The notes below the pieces were generated by a model. It worked only from the letters and a program-made list of their open reading frames with translations. It did no database searches and was not told where the DNA came from. From assembly GCF_001194135.2 (NCBI RefSeq), contig NC_069000.1, forward strand, positions 46,063,496 through 46,103,102: a DNA stretch of 39,607 nt, read 5' to 3'. Below, piece by piece: positions 6,098 through 39,388 of this stretch. The DNA comes from Octopus bimaculoides. Lineage: Eukaryota. Position 1 is the first letter of the stretch; each line of letters begins with the position of its first letter. Position numbers and translations under genes: made by a program.

Positions 6098-6704
6098 ATG
6101 TCTTCAACTGTTATATTTGCCCGAAACAGCAATAACAACAACAACAATGCCGAACAGAAGACAAGTCTGTTGCGGACCGGAAGTGATAGTAGTTATGGGG
6201 CAGATGACTACGACCAAGACTGTTACTCAGACGAAGATGTGTTCGTCGATGAATGCAACGAAGACAATGCTTCCCTTTCAAAACCATTGATGCACGCCCG
6301 TTCTCGGTCGCGGGTCCGTCCTTGCTCTCGCTCCAAAGTGACCACACGCCGTCCACCCTGTCGATGTAGATATTTAGTTCGTCCCATCTGCTGTTTCCTA
6401 CTTCTGGTCAGTACTTTAAGTACATTAATGGTACTCGTCCTGTATATGGTGGGTTCCTTCTCCGGTGATTCCGACAATCTGAAGAAGAATGGTAAAGGGA
6501 GCTGGCAGTCGACGTCTGGTCAGTGGTCTTCTGCAAGTGACTATGGTTATCTGCCGTTTGACAAGAACGTAATTGGTTGTTCCAATGTTGAAGTGGAAGA
6601 TGTGTGGGTAGTAGGTTTGCCAAAACTCACCACCGAATCAGCAATACGCTTGGTTGACGTGAACTCCGACGGAGAGTTGGATATCATCTTTGGATTCGGA
6701 ACAG
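6098..6704 (+). CDS. FAM234B-like: Coding exon 1: cytosolic tail, TM helix, first propeller motif
   Basis: ATG at 6098. Encodes the acidic SDEDVFVDE stretch, hydrophobic [24 protein letters not shown] and [24 protein letters not shown]. Donor G|GTATGA at 6705, phase 1. Confidence 0.9.
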
Positions 6705-33369: not shown

Positions 33370-34669
33370 ACCTCACCATACTTAAATTATATTTTAAACT
33401 CTCCTCTTCTATATCACTGCCTTCAAATAACTTTTTATTTTGTATTGACAGTGACTTCGAAGATTGGGCCAGCTAAGCTAACGTCGGACTGTGATGACTT
33501 AGCTGGCCGAAACTTCGAAGTCACTGTCAGTACCATTTGGATAAACAACAGGTTTACTTACTTTGATGTACTTTCGTTTGTTTATCTTTGGTTAACAGAA
33601 GAACGAAACAAAGACGAGCACAAAGCGTGGGTTAACACGACAGAGGAGGTTGTGAAGTTCATCAGCAACTCCCCAGAGTATCTGGACGACTATCTCTATT
33701 ATCTTTCACTCACTGTTCCTGTGAACTTTGGTGAAGAAGATCAGATGAAAGTGGCCGAAAAGGTAGGTTAGTTTGGTAGGCACAGCGTTAATACTGCATT
33801 GTGCAAACTTCGCAGTTCTACGTTCGAATCGATCCAAGATCGTTATCTCGCACTTGACGTTTAGGGGAGATGAAAATGTGTAAGGAAACTTAATACAGTT
33901 TAATTTAGGGATGACTAATTAAAATATTAACATAGAAAAGATGTGGGGCAACAGAATAGTTGGTGGGATAACAAAGGTTTAAGTGTGACAACATGGTGGT
34001 ATATTCACACATAGCTACGTACACCCGGTCTGTCCATTCAGCCAAAATATGTGTGAGTGTGTATACTTGGATTGACTCGTTCAACTAAAACCTTTGAAGG
34101 TGGTGCTGCAGCACAATCCATTGGCTGAAACAAGTAAAAGAATAATTGATAAAATGATAATAAAAATGATAGAATATATGAGAGATTTGCTCTATTATTT
34201 AACAAATTTCTGTTATATTTGGCGGATTCTGCATGACTCACCAATTTTAATCTATTTGACTCTTGCAGCAGAGAATCATCAATGAATATGGACCAATCAG
34301 TAAAGAATCGGCCAGGAAACAATACGGTAAGAGCGGTGAGAGTGGGTCTGCCCCGAAAAAGGGTAATGTCGATAACCAACGGAAGTCATCGCAGCAAAAA
34401 GGAAGTAGATATTATAACAACAATAAAAACATTGATGCAGCTCGGGCCCTGGGAGGAGACCGAGGTTATTTCTTGGGTCGCGGGATCGATACCAGAATGA
34501 GTAGCAATTCTAGGCCTACCAATAATCGAAGAATTATCAACGATGCTAATGGTGGCAATGGCGACCGTGCTAATGTCGATTCTTCACAATTTGGTGACTT
34601 TTACGACACTGCTGATGGTGGTGGTGGTGGTGATGATGGTGGTGGTGGAGGTGGTGGTGCTGGTGCTGG

Positions 34670-34700
<31 letters not shown>

Positions 34701-37700
34701 GCTGGTGCTGGCTATACGGGGTTGGATTCTTCGAGGGACTATTCTCAGGACTCACAAGATTATTCTTTATATCCATACCAGCAAAACTCTCAAAATGGTC
34801 AAGACGATACTGGAATCCGTCAAGGTGAACTGCGACAAAATTCGAACAAAAATCGTTACAGAAATTATAGAAACCAATACAGTGATACAGATCGATACAA
34901 TTACGGCAGAATGCGGCAAAAACGAATTGAAAGACAACCGAAAAGAAGCACCCAATCTGACATTACACCAGATGGCGCATGGAAGCGCTCGCAGAAAAAT
35001 ATCCGTCCTTCAACAGCTGAAAACAACATTAGTGGCGAACAAACGTTACAAGAACTGTCTAATATAATTATGAGGCGTAAAAGAGCAATCGCTAAACAAG
35101 TAAAAGACATTAAAACATCTACGAATGAACAAAATGTTTCCCAACAAGAAAGCACACTGCGAGAAAAACGAAGAATCACCAGAGAAATTCGTTCAAAGAA
35201 GCAAAATGAGAAATACTCAGAAAGTAAAATTGTAGAAAATTTGAAAAAATTGTTTTCTTTAAAACGAAATCGGCGCCATATTGGTCCACATGATACGAAA
35301 GGTCTGATGAGACTTATATCAACTGGTTCTTTGGTTCCGTCTAATTTACCTCCAAACCACCCAGACTTCAACCATTCCATCGATATTGTATTTGCTACCT
35401 ATTGGTTTTACCCAGCAGAAACGAGAATTATTTTACCACAAGACAAAAAGTGTATACAACAGAGAATGGATGACCAAAGCATACGTTTTGATCAGACGAG
35501 TAAGTAAAATAAAATGTTTTGTTTTTTAACAATTTCTCATTATTGATTAAGGTTCCTGGATTGGTGGAATAGTCATAGCATCTGATAAAATGCCTTGTCA
35601 GTAATCTGTTAGCTCCTCTACTCTTATTCAATCCATCTCACCTCAAACCGTGCACTAAACTGTTCACTCAACCCTTATTTCCCAGACATTTTCCTCTGAC
35701 ATTTCTAAGCGATTTTCTGCCTATTTCCTCATGGAAATTAATGGAAATTAATTACATTGAGGTACATAAAATTAAATGTTTTAATTCAGAGACAGAACTG
35801 AATTATTTGCATTAGATACGGATTAAATATATCAACAAAACTCTTCTCTCAGAAAAAACGTTAGTCTCTAAACGTCACATTCCTTTTTCCTTTCTCCATA
35901 CGAATTTTTCCAAACTCGTGATATTCATTGTATAATTTTTACCGACGCATTCTCCACCGCTCTCCTCGGACTCTGCTGTGTTTTATTTTTAAAAATACAA
36001 ATAAAACGGTTTTACTACTCACTGCAGACACAAGCGGACAAATAAAACTGTTAAATGATTTAACAGCTGAATAAATATTAAAAAAAACACACAATGCAGA
36101 TATAAAAATAGTGTAGTTTATATTAGGTTCCAAGAAACCACAATAAAGAATGACTTTTCTTGAAGCTGAGAAAATATCAGTGACCTGTCTCTGTAACAAG
36201 GAGGTATTTGTCTATTTGAAAAGTCAACCGGAAGTCTACTGATGTATTTAGTTAACAAAATAGTTAATCCTTGATTTGTTGGTTGTTAATTTTGTTTTGA
36301 TTAATGAAAAGTTTTAAAGTTGATACGTAAGATGTCTGTTTAAATGTTGACCGATCAGGTATCGTCTGCTTTGATGTTAACCGACCACGTATCGTCTGCT
36401 AAAAATGTTGGACGACCAGGTATCGCCTGCTTTAATGCCAGACGACAAGGCATCGTCTGCTTTAATTAATTGTTTGTGGTTATTTATGTATTTATTCGTT
36501 TGTCACCCAATTTTCACAGGTAAATACTATGGCATGGATGACGATGCGTATGAACATGCTATCACTGAAGAATGTTTGCAAGTTCATGGAAAGAAAGAAC
36601 ATCACCACGACAACTATAATCCGTACAATATACCAATGGGACAGATGACACTCTACAGGTGAGAAGATTGAAATTCATATATAAGCGAAGAAACTTTGTG
36701 GCTGCTCTTCAGATTTATTTCGTTTACTCGAAAGAAATCAGTTTTCCGCTTGCATCACAATAAAGAGCGAGATTAAATAAACTCTCTTCGTTCCTTTTCT
36801 CAAAGTCTTAGCTTGAAACATAAGAAATCACATCCTCCTTGTGGCACACAACTTTGTTGTCAACACAAACCATCTTCCAGTGAAAATTTGTTCGTCGTTT
36901 ATGCAACATGTGGAAGTATTACTACATGCATGAATAAAATATAATCTATCACCCATAAGATACATGTAGATGCACAGTCATGTCATTTTGATTAATTCAT
37001 CTTAAATATAATATGTAAGACAAAATGCTATTGATGTTTCGGCAATCAATGCGAAATAGATTTTAGATGCTCGATAAAAGATGTAATACTTTGGACGCTG
37101 TCAGTTAAATATATATTAGCCAGAAATTGATTTTATGGGATCCAGGCTTGCAAACTTTTAAGACATTCAGTCACAAACATATGTGTGTCCGTGCATATAT
37201 ATATATATATATATACCCCACACACATATCATATATACATATATACACATACATATATACATATATGTGTATGTACGTGTGAGTGCGTGTATGCATATAT
37301 ACACACATGTATATATGTATGTATGTATATATATATATATATATATATNNNNNNNNNNNNNNNNNNNNNNNNNNNNNNNNNNNNNNNNNNNNNNNNNNNN
37401 NNNNNNNNNNNNNNNNNNNNNNNNNNNNNNNNNNNNNNNNNNNNNNNNNNNNNNNNNNNNNNNNNNNNNNNNNNNNNNNNNNNNNNNNNNNNNNNNNNNN
37501 NNNNNNNNNNNNNNNNNNNTTATATACGTACATATATGTGTGTGTTCATTACATTATACATTATGCATTAAATGCATATATATACACACATACAGTATAT
37601 ATTTACACATGCACCTGAATGAAATGTAAGCTTTTTTTAATATATTTCTTTTAACGAACAAGACCGATGCCACGATCAGGCAGAGGTAAAAATCTTGATA

Positions 37701-38192: not shown

Positions 38193-39388
38193 TTGTGTGT
38201 GTTTCTATATATGCATGTTTGTATGTTTATAATCATAAGTGTATGTGTATACATATGTATGCACGTGTATATGTATATAATATTTGTTTTGTGTATAACG
38301 ATATATAACGAAAGCGAAGGCTTTCTTTAAGGGTCACTCATTGCAATAAAATGCACGATGAGATTCATTTATTTAATCAGGGTAACTGTTGACAGTGACT
38401 TCTATGTATATGCATATATATGGGTATGTATGTGTGTTTGTGTGNNNNNNNNNNNNNNNNNNNNNNNNNNNNNNNNNNNNNNNNNNNNNNNNNNNNNNNN
38501 NNNNNNNNNNNNNNNNNNNNNNNNNNNNNNNNNNNNNNNNNNNNNNNNNNNNNNNNNNNNNNNNNNNNNNNNNNNNNNNNNNNNNNNNNNNNNNNNNNNN
38601 NNNNNNNNNNNNNNNNNNNNNNNNNNNNNNNNNNNNNNNNNNNNNNNNNNNNNNNNNNNNNNNNNNNNNNNNNNNNNNNNNNNNNNNNNNNNNNNNNNNN
38701 NNNNNNNNNNNNNNNNNNNNNNNNNNNNNNNNNNNNNNNNNNNNNNNNNNNNNNNNNNNNNNNNNNNNNNNNNNNNNNNNNNNATTATGTTTTCATGCAT
38801 TCAGTCGCCTACGGAGTTCCATTGTCAGTTAAAAAGTATTATTTTAAACTCATGTAAAAAAATTCAAGTTTTTGCCGGCAGGTCGAAATCAGTTCGGATT
38901 ATTATTTTTGTTAATTTAGGAATTGCTGTCAGGTAGTTAATCGGGCAGAATTTCTCTGCAAGACACAAATTGCAGCATTTCGATCTATAGTGACAATTTT
39001 CAAAAAATACGCTTAAGGTTCTTCCTTCAACGAATTATATTATCGCCATCATTACGAAGTTTTATTATGAGAAATGAAACATTCGTATACGTTATATATG
39101 CATCTTTGTACGCAGATACCTGTATGCAGATACACGTGTGTATACATAAATATGCATACATATATCATAATATATATTTTTAAATGGATTTATATTGCTT
39201 TTTTTTTTTACAGACTTCGGATTACATGTACATGTAAAGACGACAACGAGGTGAAAAATGGAACGAAGCGATGTGCAAGAATATTACCATTCAATGATCA
39301 ACAGTGGCCGGCTTATATGGGATCACGTGCTGACAGTCATTGGTTACCAAGGCAACACAGAAGGCCACAGTCACAACATAGAAAATAA
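6098..39388 (+). CDS. FAM234B-like: Spliced gene, FAM234-family (FAM234A/B-like) type II membrane protein with FG-GAP-like beta-propeller; join(6098-6704,8741-8949,9364-9535,11727-11953,12615-12796,17960-18056,[missing exon(s)],29972-30097,33599-33762,34269-35499,36520-36658,39214-39388)
   Basis: All 11 exons are bounded by GT-AG and stay in frame. The first six total 1494 nt (498 codons); the last five total 1835 nt (phase-1 start, TAA end). The protein has an acidic N-tail, one TM helix, repeated D-x-[DN]-x-D-G-x-x-D loops ([53 protein letters not shown]) and a C-terminal QQWPAYMG motif. Family assignment is from recalled motifs; A versus B orthology is not resolved. Confidence 0.88.
6780..7135. 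repeat. Mosaic (CAC/ACC/CTA)n trinucleotide microsatellite
   Basis: Direct repeat composition; source of the Thr/His/Pro-run ORFs. Confidence 0.9.
8325..8665 (+). mobile_element. RTE-clade LINE 3' end with C-terminal C2H2-like finger
   Basis: Reads [13 protein letters not shown]...[23 protein letters not shown]-stop, then a short 3' UTR (gtcttcttcagtcctgagtggaaggccatcat) of RTE type. Confidence 0.7.
8741..8949 (+). CDS. FAM234B-like: Coding exon 2 (GVDG...CKIYF...[17 protein letters not shown]...DCLAGGRAG)
   Basis: Acceptor cttattcgccccacAG; G+GT makes Gly; donor GGG|GTACGT, phase 0. Confidence 0.93.
8975..9245. mobile_element. Fused inverted SINE pair: minus-strand 3' stub (about 8975-9035) plus a 5'-truncated plus-strand copy (9031-9245) with (ATT)n tail
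   Basis: The + copy matches 18827-19065 (aaattccgccgaggtcgact...gtaatcgact...aatttcaggccttgtgcc). 9019-9035 is the reverse complement of 9134-9150 (16/17). Confidence 0.8.
9364..9535 (+). CDS. FAM234B-like: Coding exon 3 ([14 protein letters not shown]...[18 protein letters not shown])
   Basis: Acceptor ttttctcctcCAG, phase 0; donor A|GTATGT, phase 1. Confidence 0.93.
11727..11953 (+). CDS. FAM234B-like: Coding exon 4 ([18 protein letters not shown]...[11 protein letters not shown]...[13 protein letters not shown])
   Basis: Acceptor ctcttcctattttCAG; A+AC makes Asn; donor CGA|GTAAGT, phase 0. Confidence 0.92.
12055..12600. repeat. Degenerate 36-37 bp minisatellite (about gatgacgttaagtgaatcagaaattgtaatgttatat) interrupted by a SINE
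   Basis: Unit anchors at 12081, 12402, 12467, 12504, 12541 and 12577. Confidence 0.8.
12128..12340 (-). mobile_element. Near full-length tRNA-derived SINE, same family as 18827-19065
   Basis: Reverse complement reads aaggcagcgagctggtagaatcg...cttagcggtatttcgtc...ttctgagttcaaattcc...ggccttgtgct. taagtgaa flanks both sides (12120-12127, 12339-12346), a possible TSD. Confidence 0.85.
12615..12796 (+). CDS. FAM234B-like: Coding exon 5 ([31 protein letters not shown]...SSESY)
   Basis: Acceptor ttttctttgttgaCAG, with a second in-frame CAG 6 nt downstream. Donor AA|GTAAGT, phase 2. The ORF track misses this frame. Confidence 0.92.
13365..13665. repeat. Degenerate (CACAGACT)n octamer repeat
   Basis: Many ctcacagact / cactgact units are directly visible. 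Confidence 0.8.
13800..15050. repeat. Mosaic trinucleotide (CTA, CAA, CAC, CAT, CTG)n and (CT)n microsatellite field, including gap 14523-14616
   Basis: Direct repeat composition. Confidence 0.9.
15973..16612 (-). mobile_element. Mariner (DD34D-type) transposase relic, 3' part with terminal repeat
   Basis: Minus strand gives [16 protein letters not shown]..., [41 protein letters not shown], then ...QHRWEKC..CKGDYVEK-stop at 16041, with frameshifts. A TIR-like cgatggtcagctgaaaagtccataagctgaccaa lies at about 15975. Confidence 0.85.
16615..16936 (-). mobile_element. Full-length tRNA-derived SINE of a second family (octopus OR/OK-like), about 320 bp
   Basis: Reverse complement starts gtgaaggcgcgTGGCTTAGTGGttagg (A box, 16914-16924) ... 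GAGTTCAATTCC (B box, 16871-16882). The body continues about 250 bp, so it is not a tRNA gene. Confidence 0.85.
17960..18056 (+). CDS. FAM234B-like: Coding exon 6 ([33 protein letters not shown])
   Basis: Acceptor ttctatttacttaCAG; AA+T makes Asn; donor CAG|GTGATT, phase 0. Confidence 0.92.
18136..18265 (+). mobile_element. 5'-truncated SINE, family of 18827-19065
   Basis: ggtcgataaattaaatac...gtaatcgactagtcccc...aatttcaggccttgtgcc followed by an (ATT)n/(GTT)n tail. Confidence 0.8.
18827..19065 (+). mobile_element. Full-length tRNA-derived SINE with (ATT)n tail
   Basis: Head aaggtggcaggctggcagaatcg, B-box-like ctgagttcaaatt, shared body with copies at 9031, 12128 and 18136. Confidence 0.85.
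19070..19754 (-). mobile_element. 5'-truncated R4/Dong-like LINE with restriction-like endonuclease
   Basis: Minus strand reads [14 protein letters not shown]..., a degenerate CCHC knuckle ([21 protein letters not shown]), RPD...[28 protein letters not shown]...PVIVGALG...ILRKA-stop, then a 3' UTR. Has an internal deletion and frameshift. Confidence 0.8.
19771..20085. repeat. Highly diverged ~31-bp minisatellite, about 10 units, core tcccacagagatgatggga
   Basis: ccc(a) anchors at about 19790, 19820, 19850, 19881, 19913, 19943, 19974, 20006, 20038 and 20072. Confidence 0.7.
20420..25610. repeat. Dense (TA)n/(TG)n/(TATG)n/(GA)n/(GGT)n microsatellite field with four assembly gaps
   Basis: Direct repeat composition; gaps 21117-21185, 22382-22832, 23552-24126 and 24922-25446. 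Confidence 0.9.
25990..26342 (+). mobile_element. L2/CR1-type LINE relic (post-RT C-terminal region)
   Basis: Reads [62 protein letters not shown]..., matching the LExVQRxxTxxI...LSYxERLxxLxLxSLExRR motif. Several stops. Confidence 0.8.
27705..27985 (-). mobile_element. Two adjacent, strongly degenerate SINE fragments
   Basis: gaacctaaaaccacgtaactgtgaaccgaacttcgtaaccac resembles one SINE head and gagatttaaaccgagg...ctaattctacccgcc the other, both on the minus strand. Confidence 0.4.
29972..30097 (+). CDS. FAM234B-like: Coding exon after the missing segment ([43 protein letters not shown])
   Basis: Acceptor ctattgtttCAG, donor G|GTAGGT, phase 1 to 1. The frame differs from the ORF-track call 29963-30166. 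G+AA joins the next exon in frame; the SRADFCR-x-RF motif is recalled from invertebrate FAM234 proteins. Confidence 0.85.
30600..30668. repeat. 23-bp perfect tandem repeat (ccccctcctaccgatcatcagtt), about 3 copies running into gap 30669-31544
   Basis: Identical units are directly visible. Confidence 0.92.
31880..32230. repeat. (TAT)n/(AAT)n, (TA)n and (TATG)n microsatellites
   Basis: Direct repeat composition. Confidence 0.9.
32395..32525 (+). mobile_element. SINE 3' end fragment
   Basis: gtcgactaaaattctttcaggtaatgccctagcatg...tgcctgaaacatgtaaaagata parallels 34075-34145. Confidence 0.55.
33446..33529 (+). other. 84-nt inverted repeat / hairpin: 32-bp arms with 30/32 identity and a 20-nt loop
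   Basis: Left arm tgacagtgacttcgaagattgggccagctaag (33446-33477); right arm cttagctggccgaaacttcgaagtcactgtca (33498-33529). Confidence 0.95.
33599..33762 (+). CDS. FAM234B-like: Coding exon ([32 protein letters not shown]...KVAEK)
   Basis: Acceptor tttatctttggttaaCAG, phase 1, matching the previous donor; donor AAG|GTAGGT, phase 0. Confidence 0.85.
34040..34145 (+). mobile_element. SINE 3' end fragment
   Basis: gactcgttcaactaaaacctttgaaggtggtgctgcagca...ggctgaaacaagtaaaagaataa; same 3' type as 32395-32525. Confidence 0.55.
34269..35499 (+). CDS. FAM234B-like: Large coding exon: low-complexity Gly/Asn/Gln/Arg-rich insert, then conserved HIGPHD...[11 protein letters not shown]...[11 protein letters not shown] segment
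   Basis: Stop-free for 1231 nt. NAGNAG acceptor tcttgCAGCAG, phase 0; donor A|GTAAGT, phase 1. A small internal intron cannot be excluded, but none is needed. Confidence 0.82.
36344..36464. repeat. 30-bp minisatellite, 4 copies (atgttgacgaccaggtatcgtctgcttta-like)
   Basis: Units start at 36344, 36374, 36405 and 36435. Confidence 0.9.
36520..36658 (+). CDS. FAM234B-like: Coding exon ([20 protein letters not shown]...[12 protein letters not shown])
   Basis: Acceptor ccaattttcaCAG; A+GT makes Ser; donor AG|GTGAGA, phase 2. Confidence 0.9.
39214..39388 (+). CDS. FAM234B-like: Terminal coding exon (R-LRITCTC...[25 protein letters not shown]...stop)
   Basis: Acceptor poly-T-aCAG; AG+A makes Arg; TAA at 39386-39388. 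Confidence 0.9.

What the first reader, a model, noticed from the sequence alone, without database searches (positions are those of the whole stretch)
33446..33529. Near-perfect 84-nt intronic hairpin: candidate novel microRNA or ADAR duplex
Seen: 32-bp stem with only two mismatches (A-A, G-G) and a 20-nt loop in AT-rich, largely unstructured flanks, ending 70 nt before an exon. It has no TSD or TE-type termini and no second copy in the window. Known: Microprocessor prefers a ~33-35 bp stem with single-stranded flanks, coleoids have a large expansion of novel, often intronic miRNAs, and their RNA recoding depends on duplexes near exons. Inference: an unannotated miRNA gene, an editing-guide structure, or a recent local inverted duplication.
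Basis: partly seen in the sequence, partly recalled or inferred. Interest (0 to 1): 0.72.

Follow-up and report, generated by a model that had tools for sequence, protein, structure and literature searches.

The report
Short palindromic insert in an intron
A real, very stable 92-base hairpin sits in an intron of a FAM234-like gene, but it looks like a young palindromic mini-transposon (or a local inverted duplication), and nothing positive shows it is a microRNA gene or an RNA-editing guide.

Summary
The hairpin exists and is far beyond chance. The inverted repeat extends to 36 bp (33442-33533, 20-nt loop), with an RNA MFE of -61.8 kcal/mol (z = -13). It is the only non-low-complexity hairpin of this quality in the window. 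TA dinucleotides flank an 86-nt core (33445-33530). The terminal 14-mer TTGACAGTGACTTC recurs at 38389-38402, starting exactly at the predicted element end (p about 0.005 for any shared 14-mer).

The block is a 49% GC island in flanks of 25-30% GC. No Rfam family reaches its threshold. The mir-942 and mir-3119 hits score on both strands and reflect geometry. The hairpin has no complementarity to the adjacent exon and does not abut a splice site. It is absent, with no trace of its 20-mers, from the orthologous locus of the only relative I could retrieve, which is a distant one.

Genome copy number, close relatives, small-RNA reads and editing could not be tested, because no available collection holds this genome or near relatives.

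Best reading: a young Made1-like palindromic MITE (about 0.45). Main rival: a template-switch inverted duplication (about 0.22). Its geometry suits Drosha and ADAR, but base rates make a working miRNA unlikely (about 0.1). Interest is low to moderate.

The parts
33442..33533 (.). Full inverted repeat / hairpin (92 nt): 36-bp stem with three non-complementary positions at DNA level, 20-nt loop
   Evidence: arms 33442-33477 / 33498-33533, 92% complementary; RNA MFE -61.8 kcal/mol (z -13.1); DNA MFE -33.7 (z -10.8)
33445..33530 (.). Putative mobile element proper (86 nt) under the TA-duplication model: 5'-TTGACAGTGAC...GTCACTGTCAG-3'
   Evidence: sequence; its first base coincides with the start of the 14-mer shared with 38389; 49% GC island against flanks of 25-30% GC. 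Inferred, not shown.
33443..33444 (.). Left TA, candidate target-site duplication
   Evidence: TA frequency in the host intron is 0.123, so both flanks being TA by chance is about 0.015 for this register
33531..33532 (.). Right TA, candidate target-site duplication
33446..33477 (+).
33478..33497 (+). Loop/spacer, 20 nt (CTAACGTCGGACTGTGATGA), 50% GC, with a weak 5-bp inner stem in the RNA fold
33498..33529 (+). Right arm (32 nt)
38389..38402 (+). Second copy of the terminal 14-mer TTGACAGTGACTTC (16/18 over 18 nt), oriented as a left end; followed directly by TG/TA microsatellite-like sequence and an N gap (38445-38783), so no interior can be compared
33599..33762 (+). Downstream exon of the FAM234A/B-like host gene (…[14 protein letters not shown]…VAEK); acceptor AG at 33597-98, donor GTAGGT at 33763
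   Evidence: orthologous exon at L002:3691-3807, 64% aa identity

Best explanation
The feature is a young, lineage-restricted, palindromic miniature inverted-repeat element. It has the same build as human Made1: two long terminal inverted repeats (about 33 nt each) around a short 20-nt core, 86 nt in all. It appears to have been inserted at a TA in an AT-rich intron of a FAM234-like gene.

As DNA it needs no host function. It would have been moved in trans by a transposase that recognises the terminal TTGACAGTGAC... sequence. This step is inferred, and no parent element was found.

Because it lies in the sense strand of a transcribed intron, the pre-mRNA will carry a 36-bp near-perfect duplex with a 20-nt loop (shown by folding). 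Such a duplex is a generic substrate for ADAR and has the stem length that Microprocessor prefers. It may therefore be edited or occasionally cropped, but nothing shows that it is. On base rates it is most probably inert.
For: The structure is real and unique in the window.

The arms differ at only 2 of 32 positions (3 of 36), which points to a recent origin.

The whole block, arms and loop alike, is a 49% GC island with sharp edges in flanks of 25-30% GC, as expected for inserted foreign DNA.

TA dinucleotides flank the 86-nt core on both sides.

The terminal 14-mer recurs 4.9 kb away in the orientation of a left end. The match begins exactly at the first base predicted by the TA model, and the preceding bases differ. 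A shared word of 14 nt or more occurred in 0.5% of 400 simulations.

The hairpin is absent from the orthologous locus of a relative. There is no hairpin upstream of the orthologous exon, and no hairpin 20-mer matches within 4 mismatches anywhere in 21 kb, while shuffled controls average 1.4 hits.

The window and the relative's locus both carry other DNA-transposon and foldback debris: a mariner-like remnant at about 16041-16560 and a foldback with 154-nt arms at L002:1479-1810.

Octopus genomes are reported to hold recently active Tc1/mariner and MITE families (PMC13282606).

Against: Copy number in the genome, the defining property of a MITE, could not be measured. No full second copy exists in 34 kb of readable window.

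The TA flanks require a mismatched terminal base (T against C), and TA is common in this intron (0.123).

The second site is preceded by TG, not TA. It is only 14-18 nt long before it runs into a microsatellite and a gap.

The only transposase remnant in the window has unrelated termini (p = 0.3-0.5).

No hits appeared in any searchable DNA or protein collection. These collections lack this genome and its close relatives, so the silence carries little weight either way.
Confidence: 0.45

Rival explanations
1. The hairpin arose as a local inverted duplication made in one step by a template-switching mutation during replication. A pre-existing stretch of about 52 nt (one arm plus the loop) was copied in reverse complement next to itself, giving a single-copy hairpin with no transposition involved.
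For: The arms are near-perfect with a short spacer, and there is no unambiguous target-site duplication. No full second copy exists in the window. Template switching is documented to create perfect hairpins of miRNA size, with more than 6,000 arising in the primate lineage (PMC10710096).
Against: This does not explain why the terminal 14-mer recurs at 38389 starting exactly at the repeat boundary (p about 0.005). It does not explain the TA on both sides. It also needs the template arm and loop to have been a GC-rich patch already, in a 25-30% GC intron (about 11% of 92-nt windows reach that GC).
Confidence: 0.22
2. The hairpin is a genuine, unannotated, lineage-specific intronic microRNA gene, whatever the origin of the hairpin. 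Drosha would crop about 13 bp above the basal junction and Dicer would remove the loop. The predicted products are 5p CUUCGAAGAUUGGGCCAGCUAA (33455-33476) and 3p AGCUGGCCGAAACUUCGAAGUC (33501-33522).
For: The 36-bp stem and 20-nt loop match the reported Microprocessor preference of a 35-bp stem and a loop of at least 10 nt (cited in PMC10710096). A UG sits at the basal junction, at -14/-13. The hairpin is in the sense orientation in a transcribed intron. Sub-threshold Rfam hits go to hairpin miRNA models of the same size. Octopus-lineage miRNAs are said to be under-counted (PMC9699675).
Against: No family reaches its gathering score (57 against 100 bits), and the hits score on both strands. 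CNNC lies at +24, not +16 to +18, and UGUG is on the 3' side of the loop. MFEI is 1.37 with 34 of 36 positions paired, which from my own knowledge is more perfect than selected miRNAs usually are. The candidate seed sites are labelled non-seed controls, and there is only a 6-mer coincidence with Ovu-Novel-13. The hairpin is not conserved in the one available relative. Base rates are poor: about 18 miRNA genes from more than 6,000 template-switch hairpins, and a handful from 7,850 Made1 copies.
Confidence: 0.1
3. The hairpin is an ADAR editing-guide (editing-site complementary sequence) that directs recoding of the adjacent exon.
For: It lies 69 nt from an exon. Cephalopods edit heavily, if the window is indeed cephalopod.
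Against: Both arms pair with each other. No complementarity of 10 nt or more exists between the hairpin and exon 33599-33762; the only exon match is an 11-nt CT-rich stretch outside the hairpin. Most octopus editing is reported in intronic and 3'UTR hairpins without recoding (PMC9699675). The most that can be expected is incidental editing of the hairpin itself.
Confidence: 0.02
4. The hairpin is an assembly artefact, a chimeric or palindromic mis-join in a gap-rich draft assembly.
For: The window has 13 N gaps and is clearly a short-read draft.
Against: The hairpin lies in 5.8 kb of uninterrupted sequence, 1.9 kb and 3.8 kb from the nearest gaps. Its arms are not identical (3 differences). 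It matches no adaptor-like or foreign sequence in any collection scanned.
Confidence: 0.04

Closest known systems
Made1 (human 80-bp palindromic MITE derived from the mariner Hsmar1; source of the hsa-mir-548 family) - PMC1784062
   Same: Almost the whole element consists of two long terminal inverted repeats (37 bp in Made1, about 33-36 bp here) around a very short core (6 bp against 20 bp). Total length is about 80-90 bp. Both are near-perfect palindromes that fold into a very stable pre-miRNA-like hairpin when transcribed. TA flanks are compatible with Tc1/mariner-type insertion. Both sit in introns.
   Different: There is no sequence similarity. Made1 has thousands of copies and a known autonomous parent, and neither is shown here: there is one full copy plus one terminal 14-mer in the window, and the window's own mariner remnant has unrelated ends. 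Processing into small RNA is shown for some Made1 copies and not for this hairpin.
Template-switch-generated hairpins / de novo miRNAs (PMC10710096)
   Same: A near-perfect reverse-complement repeat of miRNA size appears in a transcribed region, with a few later substitutions.
   Different: Those are single-copy replacements with no target duplication and no dispersed relatives. Here TA flanks and a recurring terminus point the other way. The ancestral state needed to diagnose a template switch is not available.
Novel coleoid/octopus miRNA families (PMC9699675; MirGeneDB)
   Same: Hairpin geometry and intronic sense location.
   Different: Those genes were accepted only with small-RNA reads and presence in two octopus species. 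This hairpin has neither. Its possible seeds are absent from the held seed tables. Its stem is much more perfect than I would expect for a conserved miRNA.
Rfam mir-942 (RF00997) and mir-3119 (RF03717)
   Same: Full-length alignment to models of 85-86 nt for near-palindromic precursors. Scores are 57 and 36.5 bits, and there is a 10-nt identical run GUUUCGGCCA on the - strand.
   Different: The scores are far below the gathering thresholds (100 and 80). Both strands score almost equally, so the match reflects stem geometry. By my own knowledge these are mammalian families, with no expected relation to an invertebrate intron.

Membership tests
MITE (Tc1/mariner-type, Made1-like) | Short (<600 bp), non-coding | tested here: met
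   86-92 nt. The only ORF through it is an accidental read-through with no homologs over the hairpin-encoded residues 1-30.
MITE (Tc1/mariner-type, Made1-like) | Terminal inverted repeats | tested here: met
   36-bp arms, 92% complementary.
MITE (Tc1/mariner-type, Made1-like) | TA target-site duplication directly flanking the termini | tested here: inconclusive
   TA is present at 33443-44 and 33531-32 if the element is 33445-33530. This needs one mismatched terminal base. Chance is about 1.5% for this register and higher across registers.
MITE (Tc1/mariner-type, Made1-like) | Many dispersed copies in the genome | not testable with these tools
   No collection holds the source genome. The only hint is the terminal 14-mer at 38389-38402 (p about 0.005).
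MITE (Tc1/mariner-type, Made1-like) | Termini shared with an autonomous transposase-encoding element | tested here: not met
   The mariner-like remnant in the window (about 15955-16560) has unrelated termini. A genome-wide test was not possible.
Bona fide animal miRNA gene (MirGeneDB-type criteria as applied in PMC9699675) | Hairpin with an imperfect duplex of about 22 nt, a loop of at least 8 nt and single-stranded flanks | tested here: met
   The stem is, if anything, too perfect (MFEI 1.37).
Bona fide animal miRNA gene (MirGeneDB-type criteria as applied in PMC9699675) | Small-RNA reads from both arms with 2-nt 3' overhangs and homogeneous 5' ends | not testable with these tools
   No small-RNA data are accessible.
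Bona fide animal miRNA gene (MirGeneDB-type criteria as applied in PMC9699675) | Presence in a second species | tested here: inconclusive
   It is absent from the one orthologous locus retrieved (L002). That species is distant (exon identity 64-74% aa), and close relatives could not be reached.
Any Rfam RNA family | Score at or above the family's gathering threshold | tested here: not met
   There were 0 hits at gathering score in the whole window. The best sub-threshold hit is mir-942 at 57 against 100 bits.
Mirtron / tailed mirtron | At least one hairpin end coincides with a splice site | tested here: not met
   The 3' end lies 65-69 nt upstream of the acceptor. No donor lies within the 1.9 kb of readable sequence upstream.
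ADAR editing-site complementary sequence for the neighbouring exon | Intronic sequence base-pairs with the edited exon | tested here: not met
   No hairpin-to-exon complementarity was found.
Template-switch (TSM) hairpin | The ancestral sequence shows one arm present and the other replaced in a single event | not testable with these tools
   This needs close outgroup sequences, and none are available.

The most novel reading that the evidence does not exclude
The hairpin is an unannotated, lineage-restricted intronic microRNA caught shortly after its birth from a palindromic MITE. That would give a concrete source mechanism for the large coleoid miRNA expansion, whose source the authors of PMC9699675 describe as not known.
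Probability: 0.08. Interest if true: 0.55.

Novelty: new member of a known kind. Interest (0 to 1): 0.25.

Why it matters
As it stands, the finding matters little. Short palindromic inserts in introns are a known kind of genomic debris, and this one has no demonstrated activity.

It would matter if two things were shown. The first is that the element belongs to a dispersed family in the source genome. The second is that some copies yield Drosha/Dicer-type small RNAs. Palindromic MITEs would then be a candidate raw material for lineage-specific miRNA gain in this animal group, as Made1 was for miR-548 in primates.

There is also a practical point for scanning. Hairpin perfection alone is a poor predictor of a miRNA gene. 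Flanking dinucleotides and recurrence of the terminal sequence should be checked before calling one.

Tried and rejected
(1) Parent transposon in the window. By eye, the 3' terminus of the mariner-like remnant (15955-16040) seemed to share motifs with the hairpin arm. Local alignment with shuffles gave p = 0.3-0.5, and 529 of 820 random window pieces scored as well. Rejected.

(2) Rfam membership. The mir-942 and mir-3119 hits are below threshold and score on both strands. Rejected as homology.

(3) Editing guide for the exon. No complementarity was found. Rejected.

(4) Mirtron. The hairpin does not abut a splice site. Rejected.

(5) A second functional stem between the hairpin and the acceptor (33539-33586). 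Its z-score is -0.88. Rejected.

(6) Public collections. The two-termini pattern gave 0 hits in the metagenome, prokaryote-genome and viral collections. The single-arm 20-mer gave 8 chance hits in GC-rich bacterial contigs, with no extension or inverted partner. These results are uninformative because the collections hold no animal genomes of this kind.

(7) Protein route to relatives. Three word-index searches and one exhaustive HMMER scan were run. No translated hairpin copy was found. Only distant orthologs turned up (L001, L002, P0058).

(8) Exact-ORF look-ups of the source assembly with three ORF and start-codon choices. Nothing was on record.

(9) Literature sequence look-ups. There were no matches, but the held supplements contain no precursor or TE-consensus sequences.

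(10) Seed look-up. This gave only non-seed controls and a chance-level 6-mer overlap with Ovu-Novel-13.

(11) CpG decay as an age marker. The window is barely CpG-depleted (o/e 0.83), so this is uninformative.

(12) Taxon of the window and of L001/L002. This could not be established.

Full report
**Observation.**
- Positions 33446-33477 pair with 33498-33529. That is 32 bp with two mismatches, A33463/A33512 and G33466/G33509, around a 20-nt loop.
- The 84-nt RNA folds at -55.8 kcal/mol on the + strand and -51.5 on the - strand. The z-scores are -12.2 and -11.3, and no shuffle of 200 folds as well.
- The inverted repeat continues for four more positions on each side (GTAT.../...GTAC). This gives a 36-bp stem at 33442-33533 with one T/G position, at -61.8 kcal/mol and z = -13.1. 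As single-stranded DNA it folds at -33.7 kcal/mol.
- The stem survives folding in 217 nt of context.
- In a scan of the whole window for stems of at least 18 bp, at least 90% paired and not low-complexity, it is the only one.

**Context.**
- The window is a gap-rich draft assembly of an animal genome, with 13 N runs, 37% GC and many microsatellites.
- On the + strand lies a spliced FAM234A/B-like beta-propeller gene (Pfam PF23727 and FG-GAP).
- The hairpin is intronic. It lies 69 nt upstream of the acceptor of exon 33599-33762. That exon is confirmed by an orthologous exon at L002:3691-3807.
- I could not establish the taxon. The protein collections hold nothing closer than 60-80% identity, and the source assembly is not on record.

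- If the element is taken as 33445-33530, it is flanked on both sides by TA, the target duplication of Tc1/mariner-type elements. TA frequency in this intron is 0.123, so the chance is about 1.5% for this register and more once other registers are allowed.
- The terminal 14-mer TTGACAGTGACTTC occurs again at 38389-38402 on the + strand, oriented as a left end (16 of 18 over 18 nt).
- A shared exact word of 14 nt or more between the hairpin and the rest of the window arose in 0.5% of 400 Markov-1 simulations.
- The match begins exactly at 33445, the first base predicted by the TA model, and the bases before it differ.
- That second site runs straight into the TG/TA microsatellite-like sequence common in this window, and then into an N gap. 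No interior can be compared. Its flank is TG, not TA.

**Composition.** The 92-nt block is 49% GC, and the loop alone is 50%. It sits in flanks of 25-30% GC with sharp edges. About 11% of 92-nt windows reach this GC, so this supports an insertion but is not decisive. CpG depletion is weak across the window (o/e 0.83) and gives no age signal.

**Known RNA families.**
- Nothing in the window reaches any Rfam gathering score.
- A permissive scan gives mir-942 at 57.0 bits on the - strand and 50.3 on the + strand, against a threshold of 100. It gives mir-3119 at 36.5 and 34.7, against 80.
- Both strands score almost equally, and the models are near-palindromic precursors of 85-86 nt. I read these hits as matches of geometry, not of family.

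**Microprocessor features.**
- The stem length and loop fit the reported preference of a 35-bp stem and a loop of at least 10 nt (cited in PMC10710096).
- A UG sits at the basal junction.
- The only CNNC lies at +24, not +16 to +18.
- The UGUG is on the 3' side of the loop.
- MFEI is 1.37, higher than I would expect for conserved animal miRNAs; that expectation rests on my own knowledge.
- The hairpin does not abut a splice site, so it is not a mirtron.

**Editing-guide idea.** No part of the hairpin is complementary to the downstream exon, so it is not an editing-site complementary sequence for that exon. Most octopus A-to-I editing is reported in intronic and 3'UTR hairpins (PMC9699675). If the taxon assumption holds, incidental editing of this duplex is plausible but would carry no recoding role.

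**Comparison with relatives.**
- The last protein search found one ortholog of the long exon 34263-35507. This is P0056, 35% identical but collinear over its full length. It lies on a 45-kb ENA contig (L002).
- L002 carries the orthologous exons at 64-74% amino-acid identity.
- L002 has no hairpin in the 400 nt upstream of the orthologous exon. It has no match to the arm motifs within 2 mismatches. No 20-mer of the hairpin matches within 4 mismatches anywhere in its 21.3 kb, while shuffled controls average 1.4 hits.
- The hairpin is therefore not an old, conserved structure at this position. The test says nothing about close relatives.
- L002 has its own, unrelated foldback element with 154-nt arms at 1479-1810 in the same gene. 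Palindromic inserts are thus ordinary in these introns.

**Annotated octopus miRNAs.**
- The held supplements of PMC9699675 contain seed-match k-mers, not precursor sequences.
- For 12 plausible Drosha/Dicer registers, the hairpin's seed sites appear only as 'Non-seed kmer' controls.
- One register shares a 6-mer with Ovu-Novel-13 but differs at position 8. That is chance level for this many comparisons.
- The files are truncated and the species is unverified, so this is weak negative evidence.

**Other searches.**
- Pattern scans of the metagenome, prokaryote-genome and viral collections found either nothing or chance hits in bacteria.
- An exhaustive HMMER scan used the ORF that reads through the hairpin, against 1.84 billion representative proteins. 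It found no match to the hairpin-encoded residues.
- None of these collections demonstrably contains the source genome, so none measures copy number.
- A mariner-like transposase remnant at about 16041-16560 was tested as a possible parent and rejected.

**Interpretation.** The evidence favours a young, palindromic miniature inverted-repeat element of the Made1 type.
- Made1 is 80 bp, with two 37-bp TIRs around 6 bp, is derived from a mariner and has 7,850 copies (PMC1784062).
- Octopus genomes are reported to carry recently active Tc1/mariner and MITE families (PMC13282606).
- What is shown: the structure, its uniqueness in the window, the GC island, the TA flanks, the recurring terminus, and its absence in one distant relative.
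- What is inferred: transposition, the family, and mobilisation in trans.
- The main rival is a one-step template-switch inverted duplication (PMC10710096). It explains the perfect arms but not the recurring terminus or the TA flanks.

**Activity as RNA.** Either origin would give an RNA duplex of the size Microprocessor and ADAR accept. The base rates are poor. About 18 miRNA genes came from more than 6,000 template-switch hairpins, and a handful came from 7,850 Made1 copies. I put a functioning miRNA at about 0.1.

**Verdict.** This is a real structure and probably a new member of a known kind, a short palindromic mobile or duplicated element. It has no demonstrated function. The decisive tests are genomic copy number, the empty site in close relatives, and small-RNA and editing data. 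None of them can be run with the tools at hand.

Noticed in passing
window 16041-16560 (- strand), abutting the (TA)n run and N gap ending at 15936: Decayed mariner-like transposase remnant (…[14 protein letters not shown]…[10 protein letters not shown]…GDYVEK*) with in-frame stops and frameshifts. It is too degraded for Pfam to call. Its terminus is unrelated to the hairpin arms.
   Followed up: partly
window ~16870-16935 (- strand): A stretch that looks like a tRNA-derived SINE head (GGCGCGTGGCTTAGTGGTTAGGG…GGTCATGAGTTCAATTCCCGGCG). ARAGORN calls no tRNA anywhere in the window.
   Followed up: partly
window 19416-19733 (- strand): ORF with a weak zf-RVT (reverse-transcriptase zinc-binding) hit, E = 0.05, below Pfam's cutoff. 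Probably a retroelement scrap in the intron.
   Followed up: partly
window 34263-35507 (+): The host FAM234-like gene has a long, fast-evolving, low-complexity exon with a run of about 30 Gly/Ala residues. It is still collinear at 35% identity with the relative's 431-aa ORF (P0056). Only its last 78 or so residues are well conserved (74%).
   Followed up: partly
L002 1479-1810: Unrelated foldback element in the orthologous gene of a relative: 154-nt arms, 92% complementary, 24-nt spacer.
   Followed up: partly
L002 475-527, 2557-2609, 2660-2712 and inverted pair 2608-2902 / 6166-6460: Several copies of a tRNA-like SINE head (GGGGTG.CCTC.TGG..AATGGTTAAA.CGATGGACTGCGGAATCGTAGTAA). They include a 295-nt inverted pair, 96% complementary and 3.3 kb apart, that brackets the orthologous exon.
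   Followed up: no
window 33442-33533 (- strand) vs Rfam RF00997: The sub-threshold mir-942 alignment includes a 10-nt identical run (GUUUCGGCCA) and about 58% identity overall. I judged this chance plus geometry, because both strands score and the family is, to my knowledge, mammalian.
   Followed up: partly
window 38330-38343 vs 38389-38402: AAGGGTCACTCA, 46 nt upstream of the second 14-mer, loosely resembles the reverse complement of the terminus (GAAGTCACTGTCA), with a 2-nt deletion and a 1-nt insertion. It may be chance. The region does not fold significantly (z = -0.48).
   Followed up: partly
whole window: The window has 13 N gaps, and those I read directly (near 15936 and 38445) are bordered by TG/TA microsatellite-like runs. 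About 13% of the window is unread, so any repeat census within it is incomplete.
   Followed up: no
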